Origin: Ophelia neglecta
Lineage: Eukaryota
DNA: 64,000 nt
Assembly (NCBI GenBank): GCA_965285935.1
Contig: OZ260664.1
Location: 93,806,001 to 93,870,000, forward strand
Reading direction: 5' to 3'
Shown here in pieces: positions 1 through 64,000 of the stretch (position 1 is its first letter; every line of letters begins with the position of its first letter). Under the pieces are notes generated by a model. The model was given only the letters and a program-made list of their open reading frames with translations. It did no database searches and had not been told where the DNA came from. Position numbers and translations under genes: made by a program.

Positions 1-1226
1 CTTATTTTATCCGCAAAATGCGGATATTATGGAATCAGTAGCACCGCCGCCGCCGCATATTTTAGTCTTTAATGCGATAACTCAAAAACCATTACGTTCA
101 TCTTTTTCAAATTTGACACAGCCATAACCTTATTGAGAGGAGGAACTGATTAGATTCTGGTGAAATTCCAATAATTATTAATTAGTTAAAACAATTAATT
201 TATTACGTCAGAAACACATTTTCTGCAATTTCACAAAAAATAATTGATACATCTTTTTCAAATTTGACACAGCCATAGAACTTATTGAGAGCAAGAACTG
301 GATTTATTCTGGTGAATTTCGAATAATTATTAATTAGTTAATACAATTAATTTATTATGTCAAAAACACATTTTCTATCACATATTCGAAAGTATAGATG
401 ATATTGGCTCGAAGTTTTGTGTCATGATTCATATAATAACTATATACAATCTGTGTAATAAGTTAACTAGTTAACTTTATTAATGACCTGAAAAAAAATT
501 AGTAAAGGTCGTTTTGCATTATTATTGAGGACATGTGGAACCTACTAATAAGTTAACTAGGTAACTTTATTAATGACCTGAAACAAAATTAGTTAAGGGT
601 ATTTTGCATTATTATTGAGGTCATATGGAACCAACTTTATTAATGACCTGCATTATTATTGAGGTCATATAGAACCTACTACAATCTGTGTAATAAGTTA
701 ACTAGTACTGTGTAATAAGTTAAGTAGTTAACTTTATTAATGACCTGAAAAAATTAGTTAAGGTAGTTTTGTATTATTATTGAGGTCATATGGAGCCTAC
801 TACAATCTGTAAAATAAGCATCATTATACTATTTCATTTAGTTCATTTTCATTTAATAACTGCAGAAAAAAATAGGTAAGGTTTTTTTCTTTGAAATGGA
901 GTTTATATGGACACTTTAGTCATTTACAATTGGTTATTTTGTTAACTTTATTATTAATGATAAAAAATTAGTTAGACTTTTATTTCTTTATTAAAGAGTT
1001 ATATAGGTCAGTTTGACCATGTTATGGCCTTTGTCATGTAATTTGCATCATAATACTATTTCATTTAGTTAAATTCATTAATGGTGCAAACACTTTCTTA
1101 TCTTCTGTGCCAACATAAAACTACCATATTTACTACTCCGCCTTATACCATGTTCGCCAATCGACTATTGCACGCAATAGCGGATATAGCCATTGCTGTC
1201 GGCCCCCCGACAGCGTTGGCCTAGTT
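1..1226 (+). mobile_element. Non-autonomous Helentron/HINE-type element with internal tandem repeats
   Basis: 5' palindrome tatccgcaaaatgcggata followed by (ccg)n; matching sub-TIR gcggata at ~1180; 3' hairpin gctgtcgg-cccc-ccgacagc (1195-1214) followed by CTAGTT (1221-1226); internal ~151-bp (x2) and ~100-bp degenerate tandem units. Confidence 0.75.
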
Positions 1227-1644
1227 AAACCTAATTAGAAGTCTCTTAAATGTCCAGACACTAATGGGGAGTAAATAGGATTGTGTCATTTCCATTACCA
1301 TATTATATTGGGGGGGGGGGGAGAGGTGGGGTATTTCTGACCCTCGGGATCTGCCTTTTAATTATTTGTGAACTGGGGATTTAAGGTTTAATTTCTTGTG
1401 AATCGGGATTCGACAATTGTCCGTGATTCGGGATCAAGGATTTGAATTTACTGCAACCTGGGAATGTCCTGTTTAATTCCTGTGACTAGGGAATCACTAT
1501 TTCAATTTATCGGGAAACAGGAAATACCTTATCCTTAATGGCGTGAAAAATGCGGATTTTAAACATCCGTGATTTGGGATTTGCCCATTTTTTCAACTGG
1601 GAACTGGGACTTAACCTCCCCTCTATATTGGTAGACTATGTGTA

Positions 1645-1820
1645 CGGCGAAACCTGTGAATTAAGACCACCAACGGGACTGGAAATACTGGTCTGATAAT
1701 AGATGTGGTCTGTTTAGACAGGTTATTTAACATTGGAAGTATACAACATGGTCTCGTATTAGGGGTCTGAATAGGAAGGTGGTCTGATTATAGAGGTGGT
1801 CTTTAAGGCAGGTTTCACTG
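1645..1820. mobile_element. Tc1/mariner (pogo/Tigger-like) MITE
   Basis: TA|CGGCGAAACCTG ... CAGGTTTCACTG|TA terminal inverted repeats with TA target duplication; internal gtggtct repeats. Confidence 0.75.
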
Positions 1821-2121
1821 TACTGTTTTCCAACAGGTTGTACAAGTGCCAGCTTCAGGATGAAGATCTAATAGAGGGATAAAGATAATGCATTATTCAA
1901 CTTTCAAAATTTATCACTTTGGCAATTAAAGTTATGAACATCCATCATTGTTTTCATCAGATTTAGTGATTAAATGGATCAGCAGGTGGTACAAGTGTAT
2001 ATTTTGTTACAGCTATGCTTATAATACACATCGTGGGTAGTTGTGCCACCTGCAGTCACGTGTACATGTACATTGTAGGTGAGAAGCAAGCAGGTTTAAT
2101 GTGTTGATTTGTCTGTTTCAG

Positions 2122-2162
2122 ATGTTTGCACTCTGAGATTCTTCTACAACTTAGGCGTCCAG
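2122..2162 (+). CDS. 41-bp internal coding exon of host gene: (D)VCTLRFFYNLGVQ, OTUD4/ALG13/Otu-like motif
   Basis: Acceptor tttgtctgtttcag and donor gtgagt; phase-0 end joins the acceptor at 9778 in frame (CAG|TAC TAC CAT ATG). Confidence 0.75.
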
Positions 2163-2389
2163 GTGAGTCTCTTCTGTAGTTAGCTCTCAGTAAGGTGTCT
2201 GCATCCCTGAAGAACACATTTGGGATTCTGGTCAACTCTAAACTGTTTGATGTTTATTTTGATTCTGTCAACACAGGATTTATTCTCGACAGGAAGTGTT
2301 AACAATTATAAGATTTAGCCATAGTGGGCCACAGGAACTATCAGCAGATGATACTGTTTTACTGGGTTTTACTGTTAAATGACCTCAGA

Positions 2390-2716
2390 CGTTGGTTGGT
2401 TGTTTGGGGTTTTACGTGGCTTTTAACACTTATCTGGTCATATCACCATGGTGGCTACTTGTGACAGTAGGCTCAATATTGAGAGGGTGTATGTCCTGTT
2501 TATAGTGCTGCCTCACTGGAGTACCTGCCGTAGACACCAGACAGGGAACCCCTCCCAGTCACATTATACTGACACCGGGTTGACCAGTCCTGATACTACC
2601 CCCGAAATACCTGGCTCCTGGCAGGGGAGCTATCAGTACCTATTTTTGCGTCTTAGGTTTGACATGATCGGCATTTGAAGCCCGAGCTACCACTTACGAT
2701 GCGGACAAATGACCTC
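2390..2716 (-). mobile_element. tRNA-derived SINE (Meta/MESC-core-like)
   Basis: On the minus strand: tRNA-like head with B-box, core ggactggtcaacccggtgtcagtataatgtgactgg, and (caac)n tail; homologous to the copy at 9456-9651. Confidence 0.75.
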
Positions 2717-3617
2717 GGATGGCAAGACTTCCTTAATGACAAGTGTACAGGAAGGAAATGTTTGCATACTTTTAATTCACAGCAGTTGCAAGGATCCCAA
2801 GCCTCTCCTGTTTTGCAGTACCTTTTTTTTTTAAATAGAAGACTCACTGTTTTTCATATTTCAGGTCTAGAAAATAATGAACTTTTGTGGTAACCTTGGG
2901 TATGAGTCTTGTATTGGAATAACAAAGTTCATCTATAAGATCTTTTGAGTATAAAATCCAAATAAAATCTCAGGCCCAACCTTTTTCTTAAACTAAGGAT
3001 GCGTCTTTTATTACAGATGCTATTAGGTCATTTACGGTAACTTGGTGGCTGTGTTGGGTGGATGTCGGGATAGCATTCTTGTAAAAAAAGCTACCAACTG
3101 TCAATAATTTCAGTCGACCGACATGCTTGATTAATAAATGAAAAATATATTTAATTCTTCGGTCGCCCAGCAGTAAAGTCTGTCCCCTAGTGATTGTTGG
3201 TCCACTTTGGGGAGGGGGGCACAAACCAACTTTAAATAAGTTATTTGGTGTTTATTTTAATAACTAGTGGGGGGGGGTATGCTCCATTATGAGTTATTCA
3301 GATCCCTGTCTGCGTCAACAAAAATTGGACTAGCTATAGGTCTTTCATTTAGTTCTGTTGTGTGAAATTCACGAAAAAAACCATGATGGCTGCTCAGGTA
3401 AAAATTAATCAAAGACGCAAGCTGATTTGTGTACAGCGATTTGTTCACTTGGACACTCCTGTCAACCTGTAATGCCATGGTTACTGTGTAGAGGGCGCCA
3501 GCAGGGGCCTTATTATTGTTCAGCCCTGATACATTTGAGGCAAGTGACATGGCCACCTTATTGTATGGTTGTGTACAACTACCCGGTAGGTGGAATGATA
3601 CAGTTTGCACATACACA

Positions 3618-3937
3618 AATCAAATTTTGTGTTCTTGTTTGATTAATCTCATGTAGAAGGACATTTTTTGTCCTATGGTTGAGATGATTTTCATTATCAT
3701 CATAACCATTTATTGACATTAGCTTTACAGCTAAATACTGGTTTATTGTTTTTGTATTATTGACTATTCATATTAAATCAAATTTTGTGTTCTTGTTTGA
3801 TTTATCTCATGATGAAGGACATGTATTGTCCTATGGTTGACATGGTTTTTATTATTATTATAACCATTTATTGACATCAGCTTTACAGCAAAATACTGGT
3901 TTAATGTTTTTGTATTGTTGACTATTCATATTAAATC
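3618..3937. repeat. Tandem duplication, ~159-bp unit x2
   Basis: aatcaaattttgtgttcttgtttga...ttgactattcatattaaatc occurs twice head-to-tail. Confidence 0.85.
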
Positions 3938-4707: not shown

Positions 4708-7700
4708 TAATAATAATAATAATAGTTATTTATTTATAAAGCGTATTATTACAGAGTTAAAAACCCTTCTCATAAACGCTGTACACAAGAAAAAGGTACC
4801 ACCATTAATACCCAAGATATTATTTAAAAACAGGTAAGTAAATGTAATTTAAAAGTAAAAGTTGACTAGATTCACAGGGTAAAATTACTGTAGGCCTGTT
4901 TAAATAAAAATGTTTTTAAGCTTTTTTTAAAAGCATTAAAAATTAAAGTATCACAGTGTAGGGAGGATGGCAAGGCATTCCAAGCACTGGCTGCAGCGAA
5001 TTTAAAAGAACGTTCACCATAAAACTTTGTTTTGACTTTGGGTATGACTAGAAGATTTGAATTGCTAGAACGCAAAGACCTCCTCGGAATGTACCTCTGA
5101 AGGAGCTCCACTATGTAAATGGGAGCCATGTCATGCAGACCCTTGTACACAAATAGGCACAGCTTAAAGGCTATCCTCTGTCTGACCGGGAGCCAGTGAA
5201 GACGGTACAGCACAGGCGTAATATGTGAGAACTTGCGATGTCTAACCACCAGCCTGGCTGCGGCATTTTGAAGGCGCTGGAGCTTGCTCAGCATCCTCTC
5301 AGGTAGCCCAGCAAGGAGAGAATTCATGCTGTCAAGCTTTGACGAGATGAATGCATGGACTAGCACCTCAGTAGAAGACTGATCAAGGTAACGTCTTATA
5401 TGTGACAGTCTCCGCAACTGTAGAAAACCAGATCTAACAATGTTATTTACATGAGTGTCCAGTGACATGGCAGAATCGAAATAGGCACCTAGGTTTCTAA
5501 CGTTATCTGCCTGGTGAGCTTGGACATCCCCAATCGTGATGGCAGAGTTTGTGGGAGCAACCTTGTTGAATTTCGATGAAAAAACCATGAACTCAGTCTT
5601 TTCATCGTTCAATTTCAGAAAGTTTTCTGCCATCCAGGAGCGAATATTCTCGATACAGCCTTCCATATCAGACATCTTAGAAGTAATTTCAGTAGGGTCA
5701 AAAACAAGGTAAAGTTGTGTATCATCAGCATATAGATGGTAGTTAATGTGATGATGGCGGATGATGTCTCCCAGGCTCGACGTATAAATTGTGAAAAGAA
5801 CTGGTCCTAGTACGGAGCCTTGGGGCACCCCGCACGTGAGAGTGGATGATTCCGATCCATTACCATCAATGCAAACTGTCTGGGATCTGCCTTTCAGATA
5901 CGAGTCAAACCATGACAAAGCAGCGCCTCTGACACCTATCCGGTCCTTGAGAGTTCCCAGCAAGCGATCATGGTCCACAGTATCGAAAGCTGCAGATAAA
6001 TCGAGCAGCACCAGTAGCACAGATTTTTTCATATCAAGGGCCAGGAGTATGTCATTTTGCACTCGGAGAAGTGCTGATTCAACACTGTGAAACTCCTTGT
6101 ATGCTGACTGGTGACACTCCTCAAGGCTGTTCTCAGTAATGTGCTCCTTGAGTCTAGATGCCACCACCCTCTCTACCAGTTTAGAAACAAAAGACAAATT
6201 CGAGACTGGCCTATAGTTCTTGAGAAAGTCCCTTGGTAAGTTAGCCTTTTTGAGAATTGGTGTAATGAGAGCCTCCTTCATGCCACTAGGCACTACGCCA
6301 CCTGCAAGTGACAGGTTCACAATACGAGTGAGTGTTGGCAGGAGCTCTTCAAGGCAGTCCTTTAACAAGTATGTTGGGATGGGATCAAGTGAGCAAGATT
6401 TTGAAGGAGAAAGCTTGATGATTTGTTTCACCTCCTCGGCTGATGCAGGTCTAAAAGCACTGAGGCATGATCCCTGGAACACAGTCTCCGTAAATCGAGA
6501 CAGGACAGTATGAGGTATTGTTTGTTCAAGGCCGTTCCTGATTTTACCGATCTTGGAAACAAAAAATTCAGCAAAGCGATCAGCCAGGTGCTTGTTAGAT
6601 GTATGGATGGGAAGTATTGACTGATTGTCTGTGTTTAGCAAACAGTTAACAACACCAAACAGTTCCTTTTGGTTTCCGTTTGAAGATATAACTTTTTCCT
6701 GGTAGTATTGTTGTTTTGCTTCGTCTATCATCCCGTCCACAGCCCGGGTCTGCTCCTTAAACAAGAGTTTATCCTCTGGTTGTTTGTTACGGCGGTAGCG
6801 ACGCTCAAGCCGTCGTCGCGACCGTCTGGCCTCCTTAATATCATCATTAAACCAGGCACTGTCTGGACGAATGATGATGGCACGTGTCTTTGATGGTGCG
6901 TGCCTGTCTAGGAGCTCCAGGAGTGAGGTATTGTAGGTGCTGACCAGGCGGACGAGGTCATTCGGGGGACTGGTGGTGAGCAGTGACTGTGATATGTCGT
7001 CACGAAAAACAGCAATGTCAAGAGAACGAAGCTTTCTGCTGGTGACAGTTTTCCGGATCTTCCCTGGCTTTTCCACAGCCAGACGGAAATGAATGGCACT
7101 GTGATCCGAAAATACTGTATCAACCACAGACAATGAACTGACCAGATCTGCTTCTGATGATGTAATAACAAGATCTAATAGATGCCCATGTTCATGGGTC
7201 ACACTTTTCACATGCTGAAGCAGGCCCGATGTTGAAAGAAGGCTGTGGAAACGCTTGGCACAACCATCCGATGCATCCTCCATGTGAAAATTTAAGTCAC
7301 CAGCAAGAATGAAATCTGAGCGAGCCAACAGAAGTTCATTATCAATGAAGTTGGTGAATTCATTGAAAAAGGTAGAGACTCTCAGGTTGTTTTTAGCAGA
7401 GGGAGGGGGCCGGTACACTACATACAATAGCAAGGTCTTTGAGCTGGACGTAAGTGAACACTTTAGAACTTCAAAAGTACTGAAGTCTTGCAAAGCTTGT
7501 TGACTCACTGCAAGGTTGTTCTTGTACAAAAAGGCAACTCCTCCATACCCTGTATCTCGTGCAGCTTGATTAAAAGTATAGCCGGGTGGGCATAGTTCAC
7601 CAATAACTGGCTGATCAGCAATACCTGGCCTCAGCCACGTCTCAGTGATGAACAATATGTCCAAGTCATGTTCAAGTACGTATTCATTCAGAGTTGTGGT

Positions 7701-53111: not shown

Positions 53112-53515
53112 GAGTACATGACGGTCTGCTCCTTGGAGACTCTGGCTACCCACTGCGTCCCAGCCTCATGACACCTTTTGTCACTCCTGCATTAAGAGAA
53201 GAGCAGCGCTACAACAGTGCATTAACCAGGGCTCGTGTGAGGGTGGAACAGACAATAGGTATCCTAACAAGACGGTTCCAATGCCTACATATAGGGCTGC
53301 GGTTCCAGCCATCAAGGTGTGCCCGTGTTGTGGTGGCATGTGCTGTGCTCCACAATATTGTAAATGCGCTGCGAGACACCTGGGAGGATGATGAATGGCA
53401 CAACGACCAGCCTGGAGAGGAAGATGACAATCGCCTTGCACATGACAATAATGAAGATAGTGTGGCTGCTTGGCAAGCAAGAAGGCAAGGCATTGTCAGG
53501 AATGTCTTTGTATAT
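53112..53515 (+). pseudogene. Harbinger transposase last exon (inverted relative to preceding exons)
   Basis: LLGDSGYPLRPSLMTP..YN..RARVRVEQTIGILTRRFQCL..ACAVLHN. Confidence 0.92.
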
Positions 53516-53547
53516 CTAATTATATCTACAAAATAATGATAGCTTAC

Positions 53548-55800: not shown

Positions 55801-56460
55801 AAATGGAGAGTACTGCCTTCTAGCAGCTGCAAGTCGCTCCAGGAACTGGTCCCATAAAGAAGAAAGGCTCAGGTCAAAGCGTACGTTGAGAGGAGGGCTC
55901 AGCTAAAGTCAAGATTCTCGATGAAAATAACCAAACAATCAAAAACCAAAACATGGGATGATATTGTCCAGAGGGTAAACATGTAAGAGTTTTGCTTGCT
56001 CTGCTGTGCTGACGAGCCGAGGCGAGTAGTGCGATGCAGTATGAAATGTCAGTAGCCATGCGGTACTGTATATGTTTGGAAGGCCAAGGCCATAGAAACT
56101 GAACAGGGAGCCTGTTGAAAAGCCAACGAAATTCATATGTCAAATTTGCCTTTGGAACTTATGTTCTTATCTATTTGCTTGTTAGATGATATTTGATAAT
56201 GATTATGCTGAGTCGTAGCTTAGTGATATAAGTTAATCTTGTGGATTAAATGGGTTGCTTGAAGCAGGATTAAGCGTGGATTTGTTAATCCGATTAGATT
56301 AAAAGTTAATCGGATTAATTCAATATTTGAGATCACTTACGAATACGGATTCTGGGGCATATCCTGTTATCAAGCTTCATACGCCTTCGAAAATATATTA
56401 TCGCACGTGATGCCAGCGTCACCTGTTTGGAATATGAGGCATCTCGTCGTCTGCAACAAA

Positions 56461-56642
56461 ATGTATGCCGCGCAGTCAAGCAGAACAGTGAGTCGCACGA
56501 AGAATTGGAGCCCAAGAGAGGTGGAATCGTTAATTAGAGGGAACGTGGAGAGGAGGGAGGACATGGAGGCGGGATTTTCCGTAAAAGTATCAAAAAAGGC
56601 AAATGCAAAAGCATGGGAAGAGGTCGCCAAGAGAGTGAACAG
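56461..56642 (+). pseudogene. Harbinger Myb/SANT gene exon 1
   Basis: RTKNWSPREVESLI..KAWEEVAKRVN|gtaag; preceded by ggattaa repeats (56230-56320). Confidence 0.8.
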
Positions 56643-57069
56643 GTAAGATTTTGCTTGTTTGGTTGTGTTGACGAGCCCTGTGCCGGCCGCACAGAAGGTG
56701 TTGATAGTAGCTGATTTGATAGTGCTATCAAAACACTATCAAACCACGCACTATCAACACCTACGAAATAGCCGCACAGAAGCTTCTGATAGCCGCTACT
56801 GTTGATAGGCCCTTGATAGGCCGTTGATAGCATTGTTCGCCTATCAAATGGGCCTTCATCTATTTTTAGAATGCGGTTTCCTTGGATACAGGTACAATTG
56901 CGTTAAGATTTTAGCAGACGACCTGTTGACAGAATTTTTGGGGTTTAGGCCTAGGCCTATCAGTGTTTTTTTTTAGTCTTGACATTTAGGCCTAAGCTAC
57001 TGTCAGAATATAGGCTATTTATTATCTGAGATTGTTCACCTATAATCCAGCTGGTAGGCCTAATTGCGT

Positions 57070-57455
57070 ACGCAAAACCTAAGAGAGCTCGTGCTCCTGA
57101 CTACTCTGAGGCAGAAATATCTGTGATACGGGGTAATTTTGTAAAGCATAACAAAGTTTTGTCATCTAAACACAGCAATGACTCTACGCAGAAAATGAAG
57201 GACAAAATATACAAGGATATAGCGGGTGAAGTAAACGCATTAGGAGTAGCCGAAAGGAGCCTGCAGAGCATCAAAGACAAGTGGCAAACATTGAAAAAGA
57301 CCGTGAAGGATAAAGTAACCTCAAATGTGCGAGAGAAGAGGAGAGAGCGCGATCAAACAGGAGGCGGAGAAAACCATACCCTTGACGACCCAGACATTGT
57401 AGTTACCCTGCGCAATGAAGAAAAGGAGATACTGCAAGTTATCCCCCCTCTGCAG
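57070..57455 (+). pseudogene. Second Harbinger-type Myb/SANT (MSANTD4/NAIF1-like) coding fragment
   Basis: RARAPDYSEAE..IAGEVNALG..RSLQSIKDKWQTLK..QTGGG. Confidence 0.8.
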
Positions 57456-59678
57456 AGTTTCAAATTCCTATTCCATCACACTAAAGGTGCTCACTATGGG
57501 CGTTCCCGGGTCTTAACAAGTCACTTAAGGTGCTCTCGGGAACCTTAAGTGACTCGATACTTTAATCATAATTGCCCCCACTCCCCCTCCCGGCGCAGTT
57601 GTGGGCAACAGGTGGACAACACCCTCAATTTAGTGTCAGTCTGATGGTTATCTAGGCAACCGTTGCTGTAAGCAGATGGAGGCTGGAACGAGGACGTCTT
57701 CCGGTAGTCATTTGCCTCTAAATGGTAAGAGGAAATATTTTTATTACCGGGTTTTATTTAAATTTAATATCGCTATTTATTTGTAATTAATCTTTTATTC
57801 AAAACTGTATTTTGTATAAAATTCATTTCCTTTGGCGTCATTCATATGAGCACGACCGAAAGCTAGACCAATGACAGAAGGACCGATGATGAGGGAGAGT
57901 TAAGATGAAATGACCATTGTAATGGTTTTCATACGAGACGACAACGACGATAAATAATGACGCTGCATGCTTGACAATAATGTTTAGATATAACTTATTG
58001 TCTGACGCATCACAATACATTCTTCTTTGTCAAATAGATGAGGAACCCCCCCCCCCCCCATCCATGATGCGATCTAGAATTTGGCAGAAAACTGAGGAAG
58101 TCACTGAGGGTAGCCCACGACGATGACACATATAGGAATCTTATAACCAGGGAAAACCAGAAGGCCACACACGTCGCTGTTCAAATAGCCACCAAGAACT
58201 CATGGACTCCTTGAAAGTCCAGCCGATAACAATGATAATGGCGAGCAGCCTGGGACCTCGACTGGAGAACCCACCACTCAAAGGAGAAAGCTTGGATGGT
58301 GCCCCAACCCTAGGAACACACAGGCAAAAGGGCAGAGCTCCCCTAAGAAAGCCAGGAATCAAAACACTGGCTTCGTCTTCACAGATGAACATAGAACCCT
58401 AGTCAACAGAGCTCTAGAAATCCTGTCCAAAGCCAATATTAATAATAATAGCACCACAAGACTGTCAATCGAAGAAGCCAATAACCTGATAATGTCAAAT
58501 ACAGATTTTGACATCACTTTATTTTCTAGACTTCCAACAGGCATTATACCTGAACTTGTACTAAATGAAGAGAGCATCGACTTGTATTCAAGGCTTTTTG
58601 TTGTCAATCTATCAAGTACAACCCTTGATGATAACACTACTTATTGATAAAGGTCTCAACTTCTGCCCTTACCCCCAGAGAAGCAGATCTCAAACAAACA
58701 GTGAAGACCTTAATGCGTATTTCCGCCGGATGAAACATTTCTGTTATGACAATAATACTTGACCAACAGATCTGAAAATTATTTCTTGTCAACATTTAAC
58801 ACGAATCGACTTGGAATCGACCCCAGACCAAGATGTAGCGTTTACTGCCTTTACAGAGGCAGTACAACGCGACATAGAATGTATATCTTCTAGAGCCCCA
58901 AAAATCCATCCATTCTAGAGCACCACGCCAGCCTAACCTGACCAATGAACAAACCAAAGATTTAGACAATCTGCTAAAGAACAACTTTTTAACTAAAAAA
59001 GGGCAGATAAGAGTGGAGCGTTTATAGTGCCGAACAAAGTAGACTATGTACATGAAGCTTACCGCTAGTTATCAGACACTAAATGGCTACTTCCTAGAAG
59101 AGATACAAAAACTGGTTGAAGAAATGTTTAACAAAGAATTCATCTCTGAACATGCGTTTAAAAGCCTAGTCCAGAGAAAATGCAAAGCCCCAACTTTTAC
59201 CTACTCCAAAAATTCATAAAAAGGGCATTCCAGGCAGACCTATACTTTTTGCAAACAACTTTTCCACTGAGAACATATCTGGAATTGTAGACTCTTACTT
59301 ATACAAGCACGTCCCAAAGTTGAAGAGCTACATTAAGGATACCACCCAATTAATTAAAATAGTCGAATCAATACCCGAACTACCAGTCGGCGTCCTATAA
59401 GTGTCCTTCGACATTGTGTTAATTTATACCAGAATGGTTCACAGGGATGGCTTAACTGCGGCCAAGGATGCTTTAATGATGCCCACTTGACTCGATTCAA
59501 TCTAGGATACCACTTCTACGATGCCTAGACAAAGTCTTTGCATTAACACTTTCAAGTTTAACGGCAAACACTTTATCCAAACCAAGGGAATCGCTATGGG
59601 AACCAGAGTTGCCCATCAAACTCTTGCCTCGTGGCAGAAAAACTTGAATTAATAATACTTATGACAGCCCCCAATAAA

Positions 59679-59849
59679 CTGGCTTTTGATTAAAATTGGA
59701 GGCTCGGAGCTACATACCCCTGATTCCCTTTCCCTAACCCTTAAATCAACCCACAGATACAACCCTTGCCTTGCCTATGATTTGTTGCTTTGTGTCACTC
59801 AGAAATACCTAAGGCCTCCGCAGAGCCTCTGCGTTTAATTAATGGCCAG
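59679..59849. mobile_element. MITE inserted in the Penelope RT
   Basis: Termini CTGGCttttgattaaa / tttaattaatgGCCAG with aaa duplicated on both sides; RT sequence resumes after it. Confidence 0.65.
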
Positions 59850-60023
59850 AAACCCCTATGTCTGGTACCGCTTCATGGACAATATTTTCAGCATATGGCT
59901 GCAACTAAAGAATTATAGTGACCCCTGTGACAAAAGGGACTGCAAGATCTGCACCTTAATTGTGATAGCCAGTTATTTCCAAAGCACGGTTACAGGAAGA
60001 ACGCCAATTGGCTTAACATAACC

Positions 60024-60356
60024 ATGGATCCAGTAGCGCTAATCCAGCACGACCACACCTATCAGGCAAAATGGAAAACTTTCACCCTTGGCACTGAGAT
60101 TAACTTACATAGCTTTTGCACTAGTGTCATTGGCAGCAAAAGTGCTACAAGTATGCACAATTCCGAAAAACACCGTTCCATCAAATGGCACTGTTGCAAT
60201 GACTGCGGCGAATGGTTCCACCGTCCTGAACACTCAGCAAACCACAAACTGACTTGGAACCACATCTGTACTTGTATCGAGGATACTACCGACGATGACA
60301 CCACGATGTCGGGCATCCGAGCAGACGAACTTATGGACACTGCAAATCGTCACTAG
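60024..60356 (+). CDS. Double C2H2 zinc-finger module carried by the Penelope-like element
   Basis: (C/H)SFC-x12-H-x4-H and CNDC-x3-F-x8-H-x5-H; the second copy at 63147-63481 has the first Cys. Confidence 0.7.
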   Translation: MDPVALIQHDHTYQAKWKTFTLGTEINLHSFCTSVIGSKSATSMHNSEKHRSIKWHCCNDCGEWFHRPEHSANHKLTWNHICTCIEDTTDDDTTMSGIRADELMDTANRH

Positions 60357-60500
60357 GCACTTTCATTCATAAAGGAAAACGGATAAAAGAAAAATACACT
60401 TACTGAAGTGTCTGGGCCGACCAGATAACCAACCACCACACTGCTGACACCTGTAGTGGACATTACTCCATATCGCCATAAAGGCGAGGGAGCGAGTGTC

Positions 60501-60555
60501 TCACTGACATTGACGAAGATTGTTTTTGCAATCGAAAGGCCTAAATCACCGGTGA
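60501..60555 (+). ncRNA. Minimal type I hammerhead ribozyme (degenerate)
   Basis: tTGACGA-a-gattg-tttttg-caatc-GAAA-ggcc-TA; palindromic GGCC tetraloop in stem III; C3 to U change and weakened stem I. Confidence 0.65.
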
Positions 60556-61252
60556 CGACCACCTGCCAGTCTATTGCCTAGTGCCGGCTTTAATACTTTG
60601 AAAATGTATATCTTAACAATGTTCATGAGAAAATTTGCAAATGCAATGTAATTGTTATACAATAAAAATGTGATTATGAAGCCATTATTATCAATGTTTG
60701 GTTAAGCTGCTTACAGCTCCTGTCCTTGTTCACTGAGTTTAACCTTGGTCTCCTCCTCTCTGCACTTTGGAATGGTTACAAAAGTGTATTGCGAATCAAG
60801 TAAACGACGGATAAAATAAAATGAAGGACATAGTGAAGAAAACCAGAAACACAAATTAGACTGAAGAATGAACATTTTAATATTCGGTAAAGACGACAGA
60901 ATCTGCAAAGCACGCAAATGACATAGAGGATATAAATAACAGGACATTGGTAGGAATCAGACGAAAAGAATACGGACGGACAAGGGTCATAAAGATAGGT
61001 ACCAAATACTGTGCAGATGGAAAAAAGTATGACGCTATGAGTATAAATGATGAAAATCCAATTTCAAATGAAGATAGTGAAGACAGGTAGCGAAAATCTG
61101 GAGCTCAAAAAGTAACTGAAACGGACGTAGAGAGCTAAAACCGGAAAGGGTTCAGAAGAGATTAATGAACAAGAATCGACACTTTTTAATCTATCGGATA
61201 CAGTTTTAACTAATGATAAAAAAATCGGTAATTGGTAAAGGGGTTAGTCTTT

Positions 61253-61942
61253 GGTCTTCTATGTTACAGCTCCTTGAACTTCTGCCAACAGACACAACCG
61301 GTTTGAGGGTCAGGTGGCCGAATGTTCATCCCAGCAGGACTGACCGGGAACGACGGAATCTCCGAGACGTGCGCCTCTTCATGGCGAGGCCAGGTGGCTG
61401 CGTTCCGCCAGTTTGACTGGTGGATACTAAATAAAGCAAGACAACTTTTTTCCACGTGGATGGCGCTTCCATTAACTAAGTTTTTTCTATTTGTTTAAAT
61501 TAAATTCCCTATTTGGCTAACGCCCTGTCCGATTCGATGCCTTAATCATAATAGCCCCCCCCCCCACGCCCGTTCGACTACACCTTTAAGCAGTTGTAGG
61601 CCACAGATTGACTGCACCCTTAATTTGGCGACAGTCAGATGGTTGTCTAGGGAACTATTGTGGTAACCAGATGAAGGCTGGAGCGAGGACAGCTTCCGGT
61701 AGTTGTCTGCCTGTAAAGGGGTGTAGGAAAGATCTCTGTGGGGTTTCATTTAATGTAGCTATCTATTTGTAAATAGTCTTCTTGTTTAAAACTGTATTTT
61801 TTATAAAATTCATTTCCTTTGGCGTCATACACGTGGGCAAAACAGAAAGGTAAACCGATGACAGACGGCCCAATGATGATGGAAATCTGGAAGATCAATA
61901 TAACTTAGTTGTAACAAGAAATGAGGAACCCCCCCCCCCCCT
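61253..61942 (+). mobile_element. Penelope-like unit B (5' region only)
   Basis: Homologous to 61972-62890 and, from 61541, to 57563-58060. Confidence 0.8.
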
Positions 61943-63146
61943 CGTCCCACAAAATTAAGTACCAGATTCGTTGTCTTCTATGTTATAGCTCCTTAGAATC
62001 CTGCCGACAGATGCGACTTGTTCAAGGGTTAGATGGCCAAAGTGCACCCCACAGAACTTACCAGGAACGCTGGCATCTCCGAGACATGCCCCTCTTGGGG
62101 GCGAGGCCAGGTGGCTGCGTTCCGCCAGTTTGACTGGTGGATACTTAATATAACAAGACAACTTTTTCCATGTGGATGGCGCTTCCTTTAACTTGGTGTT
62201 TTCTTTTTGTTCAAAGTAAATTCCCTATCTGGCTAACGCCTTGTCCCATTCGATGCCTTAATCATAATAGCCCCCCCCCCCCACTCCTCCCCACGCCCGT
62301 TCGACTACACCCTTGAGCAGTTGTAGGCCACAGGTGGACGACTCCCTTAATCTAGCGTCAGTCTGATGGTTGTCTAGGCAACCGTCGCTGTAAGCAGATG
62401 GAGGCTGGAGAGAGAACAGCTTCCGATAGTCGTCTGCCCCTAAATGGTAAGAGGAAAGATTGCCAGGGGATTGTATTTAAAATTTAATGGCGCTATTTAG
62501 ATCTATTTGTAACAAGTCTTCTTATTCAAAAGCGTATTTTGTATAAATTCATTTCCGTTGGCGTCATTCACGTGGGCAAGACGGAAAGGTAGACCGATGA
62601 CAGATGATAGTGATGATAGTTTAAAGATGAGAAAACAGTGACAATAATAATGATGATGCATTCTTGACAATAATGTCTAGATAACTGATTGTCTGATGCA
62701 TCAAGATACATATAAACAAATTGATATTTGTTGATAGAATAAAAATTACATGACCCAATCTCCACTCGATGCTGAAGAAAGAAAAGATAGAAAAGTGCAT
62801 AATACAGAACCTCAAAGGAGCTGCCATGTCCTCACTGGAAATCCGGAAAGGTCAACATAACTTTGTTGTTAGAGATGAGGAACCCCCCCCCCCCGCCCCC
62901 CAACCATGATGCGATCTGAAATTTTGCCAACCAATTGAGGAAGTTACTCAGGGCAGCCCTCGACGATGACCGAGACACATATAGGAATCTTATATCCAAG
63001 GAAGACCAGAAGGCCACACACGTCGCTGTTCAAATAGCCGGCAAGAACTCATGGACTCCTTGAAAGGCCAACTGTTAACAATGATGATGGCGCGCAGCCC
63101 GGGACCTCGACTGGGGGACCAACCACTCAAAAGAGAAAGTATAATT

Positions 63147-63481
63147 ATGGGTCCTGTAGCGCTAATCCAGCACGACAACACCCGTCAGGCCAAATGGAAA
63201 ACTTCCAGCGTTGGCACTGAGATCTACTTATGTAGCTTTTGCATTACTGTCTTATCAGCAAAAGTGCTAAAAGGAGGCACAAGTCCAAAAAACACCGTTC
63301 CATCAACTGGCCCTGTTGCAATGAGTGCGGCGAATGGTTCCACCGTCCTGAACACTTAGCAAACCACAAACTGTCTTGGAACCACATCCGTACTTGTATC
63401 AAGGGCGCTAACGACGATGACACCACAATGTCGGGCAACGAAGCAGACAAACTTCAAGCAGACACTGCAAATCGTCACTAG
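63147..63481 (+). pseudogene. Second copy of the double C2H2 module (frameshifted)
   Basis: YLCSFCITVL / KSAKRRHKSKKHRSINWPCCNECGEWFHRPEHLANHKLSWNH. Confidence 0.7.
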
Positions 63482-63679
63482 GGACTTTCATTCATAAAAG
63501 AAAAACGGATAAAAGAAAAATACACTTACTTAAGTGTCTCCGCCGACAGGATAACCAACCACCACACTGCTGACACCTGTAGTGGACATTACACCATATC
63601 GCCAGCTTACAAGTACCGCACTATAACTTGGCACACAGCCAACGAGATCAACACACGGCTACAACTTCCGTTTCGCCTA

Positions 63680-63790
63680 CCAATCACAGACACGCAAAAT
63701 CGTCAGTGTGGAGCTGGCAACTTGGCTCTATCAGGGGTCATCACGAAAAGTAAACAATGGAAACCACGTGGCCTGATGAGCCTATATAAA
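63680..63790 (+). promoter_or_regulatory. Putative Pol II promoter of the PLE (CCAAT, E-box, TATA)
   Basis: ccaatca at 63680, cacgtg at 63765, TATATAAA at 63783-63790, 27 nt upstream of hammerhead stem I. Confidence 0.5.
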
Positions 63791-63809
63791 GGCGAGGTAG
63801 CGATTGGTT

Positions 63810-63858
63810 CATTGACTCGGAAGAAGGTTGCTTACCAATCGAAATGCCTAAGTCAATG
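63810..63858 (+). ncRNA. Minimal type I hammerhead ribozyme (degenerate)
   Basis: Perfect stem I cattgact/agtcaatg; CgGAAGA-a-ggttg-cttac-caatc-GAAA-tgcc-TA. Confidence 0.68.
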
Positions 63859-64000
63859 GTGACGACCTCCTGCCAGTCTATTGCCTTAGTGCCCGTTTTT
63901 GATACTATGAAAATATATATCTTAACACTGGTCATGGGAAAATTTTCAAATGTAATGTAATTATAACACAATAAAAATGTGATAAAAAGCAATTATTATC

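What the first reader, a model, noticed from the sequence alone, without database searches (positions are those of the whole stretch)
59990..63481. Penelope-like retroelement carrying a tandem C2H2 zinc-finger module, retained in its RT-less derivative
Seen: directly after the GIY-YIG tail remnant (ACG CCA ATT GGC TTA AC.., TPIGLN with a 1-nt loss) lies a ~110-aa ORF with two canonically spaced C2H2 fingers (C-x2-C-x12-H-x4/5-H). Restoring one base fuses it in frame (GLNITMDP..). A second copy (63147-63481) survives in unit C, which has deleted the whole RT/EN region, so the fingers join the N-terminal ORF in frame. Known: PLE ORFs normally end shortly after the PxGLN motif, with a CCHH linker before GIY-YIG rather than C2H2 fingers after it. 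Inference: a PLE lineage with an added DNA-binding or targeting module, or an accessory ZnF protein. I do not know this as a described architecture.
Basis: partly seen in the sequence, partly recalled or inferred. Interest (0 to 1): 0.8.

Follow-up and report, generated by a model that had tools for sequence, protein, structure and literature searches.

The report
Penelope-like retroelement with zinc-finger ORF2
The two-zinc-finger reading frame is real and conserved, but it is a separate small second gene sitting about 160 bases after the stop of the reverse-transcriptase/endonuclease gene of a Penelope-like retroelement lineage, not a fused tail; such a second gene has not been described for this class of elements.

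Summary
The ORF at 60024-60356 (110 codons, two C2H2-spaced fingers) and its frameshifted twin at 63147-63481 exist as described. Both lie in decayed, locally duplicated copies of an endonuclease-bearing Penelope-like element (PLE).

The proposed in-frame fusion to the GIY-YIG tail is an artefact of a roughly 175-bp deletion private to the window copy. In 8 of 9 fuller genomic copies the RT-EN ORF ends with its own stop codon shortly after the GLN motif. About 165 nt of spacer follow, then an ATG in good context.

This ORF2 is under frame-specific purifying selection between subfamilies (dN/dS 0.15-0.25, p <= 3e-6; other frames 1.3-2.3). All eight zinc ligands are invariant apart from one Cys-to-His change in the window copy.

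The same layout occurs in a second, young PLE family of this genome (ORF1 54% identical, ORF2 about 30%, copies 98-99% alike, with target-site duplications). It also occurs in one distant PLE on an environmental scaffold. Seven other external PLE loci with enough downstream sequence lack it.

Best reading: a PLE sublineage encoding a small accessory nucleic-acid-binding protein. No paper in the searched library describes this, and Craig et al. 2021 describe canonical EN+ PLEs as single-ORF. I rate it a new variant of a known kind. Expression and function are untested.

The parts
58083..59669 (+). Unit A: decayed ORF1 of the PLE (5'-truncated N-terminal region through RT motifs 1-4), with many stops and frameshifts
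   Evidence: BLASTN against the fuller copies L040 and L041 gives 78-81% identity. The ORF list shows only short frames.
59847..60002 (+). Unit A: remnant of the RT motif 5 region (Y-R-F-M-D-N-I-F), joined by a roughly 620-bp deletion to the RT-EN linker with the C-x4-C-x2-C motif
   Evidence: The corresponding intact stretch is seen in L041.
60003..60021 (+). Unit A: last residues of the GIY-YIG endonuclease (P-I-G-L-N equivalent). The catalytic core (about 320 bp), the ORF1 stop and the spacer (about 175 bp) are deleted
   Evidence: Alignment of the junction in 12 copies; BLAST end points.
60024..60356 (+). ORF2 copy A: 110 codons plus stop, two C2H2-type fingers. The first Zn ligand is mutated Cys to His
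60357..60597 (+). Unit A 3' tail up to the element's 3' terminus. It has a hammerhead-like core at 60510-60543 and an internal deletion of about 180-240 bp at 60478 relative to other copies
   Evidence: Rfam did not call a hammerhead.
61254..62690 (.). Two tandem copies of a roughly 720-bp low-copy sequence. A third partial copy lies at 57551-57896. It is flanking material duplicated together with the PLE fragment, not part of the PLE
   Evidence: only 3 local copies and 3 other places on the same chromosome.
62905..63139 (+). Unit C: ORF1 N-terminal remnant with the same 5' truncation point as unit A
63147..63481 (+). ORF2 copy C: all ligands present, but a 1-nt deletion inside finger 1 (about 63253) splits it into two frames
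63482..63907 (+). Unit C 3' tail up to the 3' terminus. It keeps the segment that unit A lost. Its hammerhead-like core is degenerate

Best explanation
The window holds two dead, locally duplicated copies of an endonuclease-containing Penelope-like retroelement. Its RT-EN linker is of the Neptune/Nematis type.

Shown. In this PLE lineage the RT-GIY-YIG gene (ORF1) ends with its own stop codon. A second gene (ORF2) starts on the same strand 156-165 nt later and encodes a 110-142 aa protein with two classical C2H2 zinc fingers. ORF2 lies roughly 300-700 nt upstream of the element's 3' terminus. That terminus region carries a hammerhead-like motif. ORF2 evolves under purifying selection. It is shared by at least two diverged families in this genome and by one distant PLE elsewhere.

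Because ORF2 sits in the 3' kilobase, it is carried along in 5'-truncated copies, in the upstream partial copy (pseudo-LTR) of tandem insertions, and in internally deleted non-autonomous derivatives.

Inferred. ORF2 is an accessory protein that serves the element itself by binding nucleic acid. The likeliest partner is the element's RNA or RNA/cDNA intermediate, or AT-rich target DNA, during target-primed reverse transcription. It would be made from the downstream cistron of the unit RNA or from a subgenomic or spliced RNA.

The apparent fusion to ORF1 in the window is a copy-specific deletion.
For: - Separate ORF. Junction alignment shows ORF1 stop (TAG or TAA) in 8 of 9 copies, then about 165 nt, then ATG with A at -3 and G at +4. 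In family A, ORF2 is in a different frame from ORF1 and its frame opens only 74 nt after the stop.
- Family B. ORF1 stop at L070 1303, a further in-frame TGA at 1447, and ORF2 at 1459-1884.
- Foreign PLE L076. ORF1 stop at 1471-1473 and a two-finger ORF from about 1816.
- Selection. dN/dS 0.15-0.25 between subfamilies I, II and III, Fisher p 1e-11 to 3e-6, an excess of third-position changes, and omega 1.3-2.3 in the two other frames.
- Ligands. All eight are invariant across families A and B except one in the window copy.
- Domain calls. zf-C2H2_4 27.2 bits in L032 (cut-off 27.0). zf-C2H2 25.7 (cut-off 25.2) and zf-met 23.6 (cut-off 21.2) in L070. zf-met 25.0 in L076.
- Structure. The AF2 model shows two beta-beta-alpha units at pLDDT 65-79. 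PDB phmmer aligns both fingers in one stretch to Kruppel-type tandem fingers.
- PLE identity. GIY-YIG Pfam hit, PLE RT/EN motifs read in L041, and external relatives carrying RVT_1, HTH_animal and GIY-YIG.
- Mobility. Target-site duplications of 12-13 bp for family B. A deletion derivative with identical breakpoints at three loci. A tandem with the partial upstream copy containing ORF2.
Against: - No expression data. No RNA run for this organism was found, so transcription, translation and the route to ORF2 expression are untested.
- No copy with both ORFs fully intact was seen in the sequence I could fetch.
- Seven of eight informative external PLE loci lack ORF2, so it is dispensable for PLEs in general.
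- The tree neither supports nor rejects a single origin of the ORF2-bearing elements.
- Flanks show only mild AT-richness and no common motif. This speaks against sequence-specific targeting as the role.
- DNA binding versus RNA binding is open: family A has Kruppel-like tandem geometry, while zf-met hits and H-x5-H spacing are typical of RNA-binding fingers.
Confidence: 0.75

Rival explanations
1. The zinc fingers are a C-terminal module of the RT-EN polyprotein. They would be joined to ORF1 in intact copies directly, by read-through or frameshifting, or by removal of an intron that contains the stop and spacer.
For: In the window copy one added base would join the two frames. The spacer has polypyrimidine-AG sites shortly before the ORF2 ATG in both families. 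PLEs are known to keep introns (legend of figure 1, PMC8557442).
Against: A stop codon plus a spacer of 156 to about 340 nt is present in three lineages, with further stops between the ORFs. The frame relation is +1 in family A and 0 in family B and L076, so no single recoding rule fits. The one GT near the end of ORF1, paired with the best acceptor, does not give an in-frame join (my reading). The window junction matches a deletion relative to eight other copies.
Confidence: 0.05
2. ORF2 is a passenger. A host C2H2 gene fragment was picked up between PLE terminal sequences and is carried along without serving the element, or it serves the host.
For: PLE terminal repeats can mobilise unrelated host genes in Adineta vaga (PMC3846280). 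ORF2 is absent from most external relatives sampled.
Against: ORF2 holds the same position and orientation in families whose ORF1 is only 54% or 41% identical. Purifying selection acted during subfamily divergence, that is, along the lines of transposing master copies. No close host paralogue was found in a six-frame search of the genome; the best non-PLE matches have E around 1e-4.
Confidence: 0.1
3. The open frame is incidental. The region is conserved as a cis-acting RNA or DNA element of the 3' end (needed for recognition by the RT) and only looks like a gene.
For: The non-coding spacer and the post-ORF2 tail are 80-84% identical between subfamilies, more conserved than ORF2's synonymous sites, so cis constraints exist nearby. 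The region is retained in all truncated and deleted copies.
Against: A cis element would not give a frame-specific excess of third-position changes with omega 0.15-0.25. It would not keep eight Zn ligands across about 30% protein identity, nor a conserved start and stop.
Confidence: 0.04

Closest known systems
Canonical endonuclease-containing Penelope-like elements with a linker zinc-finger-like motif (Neptune and Nematis clades; Arkhipova 2006; Craig et al. 2021, PMC8557442)
   Same: RT with the DKG and PLE core motifs; a C-x4-C-x2-C linker; a C-terminal GIY-YIG with two Cys between GIY and YIG; ORF1 ending a few residues after the GLN motif; partial tandems (pseudo-LTRs); a hammerhead-like motif near the 3' end; 5' truncation; variable target-site duplications.
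   Different: Canonical EN+ PLEs are described as single-ORF elements. This lineage has a conserved second ORF, downstream of ORF1, for a two-finger C2H2 protein.
Accessory domains in Chlamys PLEs (PHD finger, SAP, Josephin-like; Craig et al. 2021)
   Same: PLEs that have gained extra nucleic-acid- or chromatin-related modules.
   Different: Those domains are fused into the main ORF of N-terminal-EN elements of algae and slime moulds. Here the module is a separate cistron in a C-terminal-EN animal PLE.
EN-minus PLEs with several ORFs (Athena / Terminons of bdelloid rotifers)
   Same: PLE-type RT elements with more than one ORF.
   Different: Those lack the fused EN, are telomere-associated and giant, and have an upstream ORF1 with coiled-coil. 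No C2H2 downstream ORF is reported (figure 1 legend of PMC8557442; otherwise my own knowledge).
R2 non-LTR retrotransposons (N-terminal C2H2 finger(s) plus Myb motif that bind the target DNA; my own knowledge, not tested here)
   Same: C2H2 fingers used by a target-primed retroelement.
   Different: In R2 the fingers are part of the single RT protein and confer strict site specificity. Here the protein is separate and the insertion flanks share no motif.
Separate nucleic-acid-binding accessory proteins of other transposons (LINE ORF1p with CCHC knuckles; the Myb-like second protein of Harbinger/PIF transposons, an example of which lies in this window)
   Same: A small DNA- or RNA-binding protein encoded beside the catalytic protein.
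   Different: Different fold, different position (upstream in LINEs), and unrelated element classes. This is an analogy of logic only.

Membership tests
Penelope-like element, EN+ (C-terminal GIY-YIG) | PLE-type reverse transcriptase (DKG motif, RT motifs 1-7, thumb) | tested here: met
   Motifs were read directly in L041 and L040. External relatives carry PF00078 and PF26215. Pfam RVT_1 itself did not hit the L041 pieces. The window copy keeps only decayed remnants.
Penelope-like element, EN+ (C-terminal GIY-YIG) | C-terminal GIY-YIG endonuclease with a CCHH motif (two Cys between GIY and YIG) | tested here: met
   PF01541 scores 25.7 bits against a cut-off of 22.6 in L041. The Cys pair between the two motifs is visible in L041 and L070. 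In the window only the last 5-6 residues survive.
Penelope-like element, EN+ (C-terminal GIY-YIG) | Linker C-x2-5-C-x2-C motif (Neptune/Nematis type, absent in Penelope/Poseidon) | tested here: met
   C-x4-C-x2-C is present in L041, in L070 and in the window at 59930-59960. Which of the two clades it belongs to was not resolved, because no named reference sequences were at hand.
Penelope-like element, EN+ (C-terminal GIY-YIG) | Partial tandem / pseudo-LTR organisation, 5' truncation, target-site duplication | tested here: met
   The L069+L067 tandem is flanked by a 13-bp duplication. L066 has a 12-bp duplication. L033 has an upstream partial copy. L031 and L034 are 5'-truncated.
Penelope-like element, EN+ (C-terminal GIY-YIG) | Hammerhead ribozyme in the terminal repeat | tested here: inconclusive
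   A CUGA-N-GA ... GAAA-GGCC-UC core lies 45-55 nt before the 3' end in both families. It has a palindromic AGGCCU and an extra A before helix II. Rfam found no hammerhead at E <= 1.
Penelope-like element, EN+ (C-terminal GIY-YIG) | Single ORF | tested here: not met
   A second, selected ORF follows ORF1. This is the point of difference. All catalytic hallmarks are met, so I file it as a variant PLE.
Classical C2H2 zinc finger (Pfam zf-C2H2 clan) | C-x2-4-C-x12-H-x3-5-H spacing with conserved ligands | tested here: met
   Two units are present in families A and B and in L076. Ligands are invariant in alignment A1 except one in the window copy.
Classical C2H2 zinc finger (Pfam zf-C2H2 clan) | Profile score at or above the curated cut-off | tested here: met
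   L032: zf-C2H2_4 27.2 against 27.0. L070: zf-C2H2 25.7 against 25.2 and zf-met 23.6 against 21.2. L076: zf-met 25.0 against 21.2. All are marginal. Window copy A has no hit, and the copy C fragment has E = 0.016.
Classical C2H2 zinc finger (Pfam zf-C2H2 clan) | Beta-beta-alpha fold binding zinc | tested here: inconclusive
   The AF2 model has two strand-strand-helix units at pLDDT 65-79, but overall pLDDT is 58.5. Zinc binding cannot be tested with these tools.

The most novel reading that the evidence does not exclude
An old sublineage of endonuclease-bearing Penelope-like elements, found in at least two unrelated animals, is truly bicistronic. Its ORF2 two-finger protein would be a required trans-acting retrotransposition factor, the first accessory protein known for EN+ PLEs. 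It would bind the element's 3' tail RNA or the RNA/cDNA hybrid (or AT-rich target DNA) to start target-primed reverse transcription. Non-autonomous deletion derivatives that keep ORF2 would still supply it.
Probability: 0.3. Interest if true: 0.7.

Novelty: new variant of a known kind. Interest (0 to 1): 0.55.

Why it matters
EN+ Penelope-like elements are treated as single-protein retroelements, and how they choose and prime their targets is poorly understood. A conserved, selected second gene for a small zinc-finger protein would add a component to that machinery. It would also give an experimental handle: one small protein to express and test for binding. In practice, TE annotation pipelines should stop reading such ORFs as host zinc-finger genes, and should stop ending PLE models at the ORF1 stop. 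If ORF2 proves dispensable or untranslated, this is only a lineage-specific curiosity.

Tried and rejected
- Word-indexed protein search with ORF2 of family A and of family B found no homologue. This is weak evidence, since TE ORFs are rarely called as proteins.
- The exhaustive HMMER search with the ORF2 alignment was swamped by long poly-zinc-finger proteins of 450-3000 aa with 6-31 matched stretches. It says nothing about orthologues.
- The ESM Atlas gave only generic C2H2 clusters.
- Rfam found no hammerhead in the window tail or in seven loci. The motif was then found by a pattern of my own, so its status stays open.
- The search for RNA runs found none, only three runs of unknown kind from one sample. 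I therefore did not use read laying, because contigs of DNA runs cannot show expression or splicing.
Consequently full-length family B copies and other PLE families of this genome could not be inspected. For those I used coordinates only, and I did not tabulate presence or absence of ORF2 across those families.
- Fusion by splicing: I looked for an in-frame GT...AG pair across the ORF1 stop in family A and found none (reading). This is not excluded without RNA.
- Site-specific targeting: 3' flanks of about 15 insertions share no motif. They are only about 31% GC, against 41% background.
Copies were compared one by one.
- No complex prediction was run, because I make no claim that ORF2 binds ORF1.
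Full report
WHAT IS IN THE WINDOW

The window is part of a 762-Mb eukaryotic assembly. From 58083 to 60597 lies a decayed copy (unit A) of a Penelope-like element (PLE). BLASTN against fuller genomic copies maps the following:
- 58105-59669 to the N-terminal region and RT motifs 1-4
- 59847-59904 to the RT motif-5 region
- 59905-60002 to the RT-EN linker with a C-x4-C-x2-C motif

The ORF at 60024-60356 has 110 codons. It carries two units with C2H2 spacing. A twin lies at 63147-63481 in unit C, which lacks RT and EN.

Copy A has His in place of the first Cys of finger 1. Copy C has a 1-nt deletion inside finger 1. Pfam finds nothing in copy A and only a sub-threshold match in the copy C fragment.

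Units A and C are not independent insertions. They share four things:
- the same 5' truncation point
- the same poly-C junction
- the same upstream roughly 700-bp sequence
- the same 3' flank beyond the element's terminus

The 700-bp sequence is low-copy: three local copies plus three other places on this chromosome. Unit C is therefore a local duplicate that lost its middle by deletion.

THE FUSION IS A DELETION ARTEFACT

The genome holds about 18 copies of the ZnF segment, falling into three subfamilies 75-80% identical to each other in ORF2. I fetched eleven larger loci.

In the junction alignment, eight of nine copies that reach ORF1 end it with G-L-N-D-F-A and TAG or TAA. About 165 nt of spacer follow, then A-A-C-C-ATG-G. 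The window copy lacks exactly the stretch from just after G-L-N to six bases before the ATG.

In family A, ORF2 is in the +1 frame relative to ORF1, and its frame opens only 74 nt after the ORF1 stop. No read-through or frameshift can join them.

L041 is the best-preserved copy. Its RT-EN frame has 258 + 451 codons broken by a single stop, and it has a Pfam GIY-YIG hit. Its own ORF2 has an 88-bp deletion.

ORF2 IS A REAL, SELECTED GENE

- Four family A copies have an intact 110-codon ORF2 (L032, L033, L034, L035).
- Between subfamilies, dN/dS is 0.15-0.25 (Fisher p from 1e-11 to 3e-6), with an excess of third-position changes.
- The same DNA read in the other two frames gives 1.3-2.3.
- Within subfamily I the few differences look neutral, as expected for decay after insertion.
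- The subfamily-I protein reaches the gathering score of zf-C2H2_4 with two stretches.
- A PDB sequence search aligns both fingers in a single stretch to Kruppel-type tandem fingers such as ZNF568 and PRDM9. This reflects a seven-residue inter-finger linker.
- An AF2 model built on alignment A1 shows two strand-strand-helix units at pLDDT 65-79, with disordered ends.

THE SAME LAYOUT IN OTHER PLES

A six-frame search with ORF2 found a second family in this genome, family B (loci L066-L070).
- Its ORF1 is 54% identical to family A over thumb and EN.
- ORF1 ends K-P-K-G-I-N-D-H-S plus TAG. A spacer of 156 nt with a second in-frame stop follows, then a 142-codon ORF2 beginning M-D.
- Its two fingers are 30-31% identical to family A, and all ligands align. 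It passes zf-C2H2 and zf-met.
- Family B is young. Copies are 98-99% identical. Five complete ORF2s are intact, with about ten copies in all.
- L066 has a 12-bp target-site duplication. A tandem of a 5'-truncated copy plus a deletion derivative is flanked by a 13-bp duplication. In that tandem ORF2 occurs in the upstream partial copy (the pseudo-LTR) as well as at the 3' end.

Two further decayed lineages show an EN remnant followed about 300 bp later by a ZnF remnant: C1:42.52 Mb (L062) and C1:46.89 Mb.

Outside this genome, the closest ORF1 relatives are only about 41% identical. One of them is named, from Mytilus edulis. I read the DNA downstream of ten of them.
- One of them, the environmental scaffold L076, has a two-finger ORF about 340 nt after the ORF1 stop. 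It begins M-D and is 43% identical to family A ORF2 over 49 residues, including the F-S-S-x-S-A-K-S-R-H stretch of finger 1.
- Seven loci with at least 750 nt of downstream sequence have none (L072-L075, L077, L080, L081).
- Two are too short to tell.

In a tree of the thumb-EN region, families A and B are sisters (100/99). Three of the ORF2-less loci fall in a separate well-supported clade. L076 sits in an unresolved polytomy. A single gain is therefore neither supported nor rejected.

ANATOMY OF THE UNIT

Comparison of solo ends and tandems puts the 3' terminus 45-55 nt after a conserved core of the form CUGA-N-GA, helix, GAAA-GGCC-UC. This resembles the minimal hammerheads reported for PLEs, with a palindromic AGGCCU. 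Rfam does not call it, so I treat it as hammerhead-like only.

The unit, from 5' to 3', is:
1. short leader
2. ORF1 (long N-terminal region, RT, linker, EN)
3. spacer
4. ORF2
5. 300-700 nt tail containing that motif

A derivative with one identical 2.76-kb internal deletion sits at three dispersed loci with different flanks (L032, L033, L037). It keeps an intact ORF2 in two of them. Deleted, non-autonomous copies carrying ORF2 have therefore been mobilised. Their ORF2 is young, so its intactness proves little.

HOW IT MOST LIKELY WORKS

Shown: a separate, conserved, selected ORF for a two-finger C2H2 protein inside the element.

Inferred: the protein serves the element by binding nucleic acid. 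Two lines of evidence point in different directions on the partner.
- Towards DNA: family A has Kruppel-like tandem geometry.
- Towards RNA or hybrid: the H-x5-H spacing of finger 2, and the zf-met matches in family B and L076, are typical of RNA-binding fingers.

Insertion flanks are mildly AT-rich (about 31% GC against 41%) but share no motif. Strict site-specific targeting of the R2 kind is therefore unlikely.

How the downstream cistron is expressed is unknown. Both families have a polypyrimidine-AG site 20-35 nt before the ATG. This would fit a subgenomic spliced RNA, but that is speculation. No RNA run for this organism was found.

COMPARISON WITH WHAT IS KNOWN

Craig et al. 2021 (PMC8557442) state that canonical EN+ PLEs have a single ORF. 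They describe accessory domains (PHD, SAP, Josephin-like) only as fusions in Chlamys elements, and an extra ORF1 only in EN-minus elements. Arkhipova et al. 2013 (PMC3846280) show that PLE terminal repeats can mobilise host genes. That offers a route by which a finger-coding fragment could first have been captured. No paper in the searchable library links PLEs with an encoded C2H2 protein or a second ORF. Repbase and Dfam could not be searched.

All catalytic and structural hallmarks of EN+ PLEs are met, and only 'single ORF' is not. I therefore file it as a new variant of a known kind.

LIMITS

- I built no consensus and repaired no frame. The genome tool forbids this for virus-like stretches, so copies were compared individually.
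Other PLE families of this genome were judged from coordinates only.
- Expression, translation and binding are untested.

Noticed in passing
window 53168-53536 (+), 56407-56646 (+) and 57123-57548 (+): Remnants of a Harbinger/PIF-type DNA transposon lie just upstream of the PLE. There is a DDE_Tnp_4 transposase fragment (E = 3e-11) and two Myb/SANT-like DNA-binding ORFs (Myb_DNA-bind_5, E = 2.5e-13 and 6.5e-6). This is the usual two-gene set of that superfamily.
   Followed up: partly
window 60510-60543; L070 2177-2205; L031, L033, L034, L036, L038, L039 and L041 tails: A hammerhead-like core (CUGA-N-GA, 5-bp helix, GAAA, palindromic GGCC, UC) is conserved 45-55 nt before the 3' end of both PLE families. 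It has an extra A before helix II. Rfam does not call it.
   Followed up: partly
window 61254-62690 and 57551-57896: A roughly 720-bp sequence is present as two tandem copies plus a third partial copy. Genome-wide it occurs at only three other places, all on the same chromosome. Its nature is unknown.
   Followed up: partly
L041 (G000:C8:37868300-37876300, minus strand), oriented 357-3541 and 7191-7479: The best-preserved family A copy lies inside a long array of a roughly 39-bp satellite, which continues on both sides.
   Followed up: no
L037 (G000:C7:93882400-93890500), 1867-3805: About 18 kb beyond the window end, another PLE of a different family lies just upstream of a family A deletion derivative. 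It has open frames with G-L-K-Y and linker/EN motifs. This stretch of chromosome 7 is a PLE cluster.
   Followed up: no
table, e.g. G000:C8:12036994-12052360 and C5:50089749-50125317: Other PLE families of this genome (EN 32-39% identical) form regular tandem arrays, with periods of about 3.7 kb and 7 kb and open frames up to 1197 codons. No ORF2-like match was listed next to them.
   Followed up: no
L067/L069 (G000:C1:36134238-36139348): The family B deletion derivative keeps a fully open 290-codon N-terminal ORF1 fragment as well as an intact ORF2, in a 1.9-kb tandem. The two units are identical over 1333 nt.
   Followed up: partly
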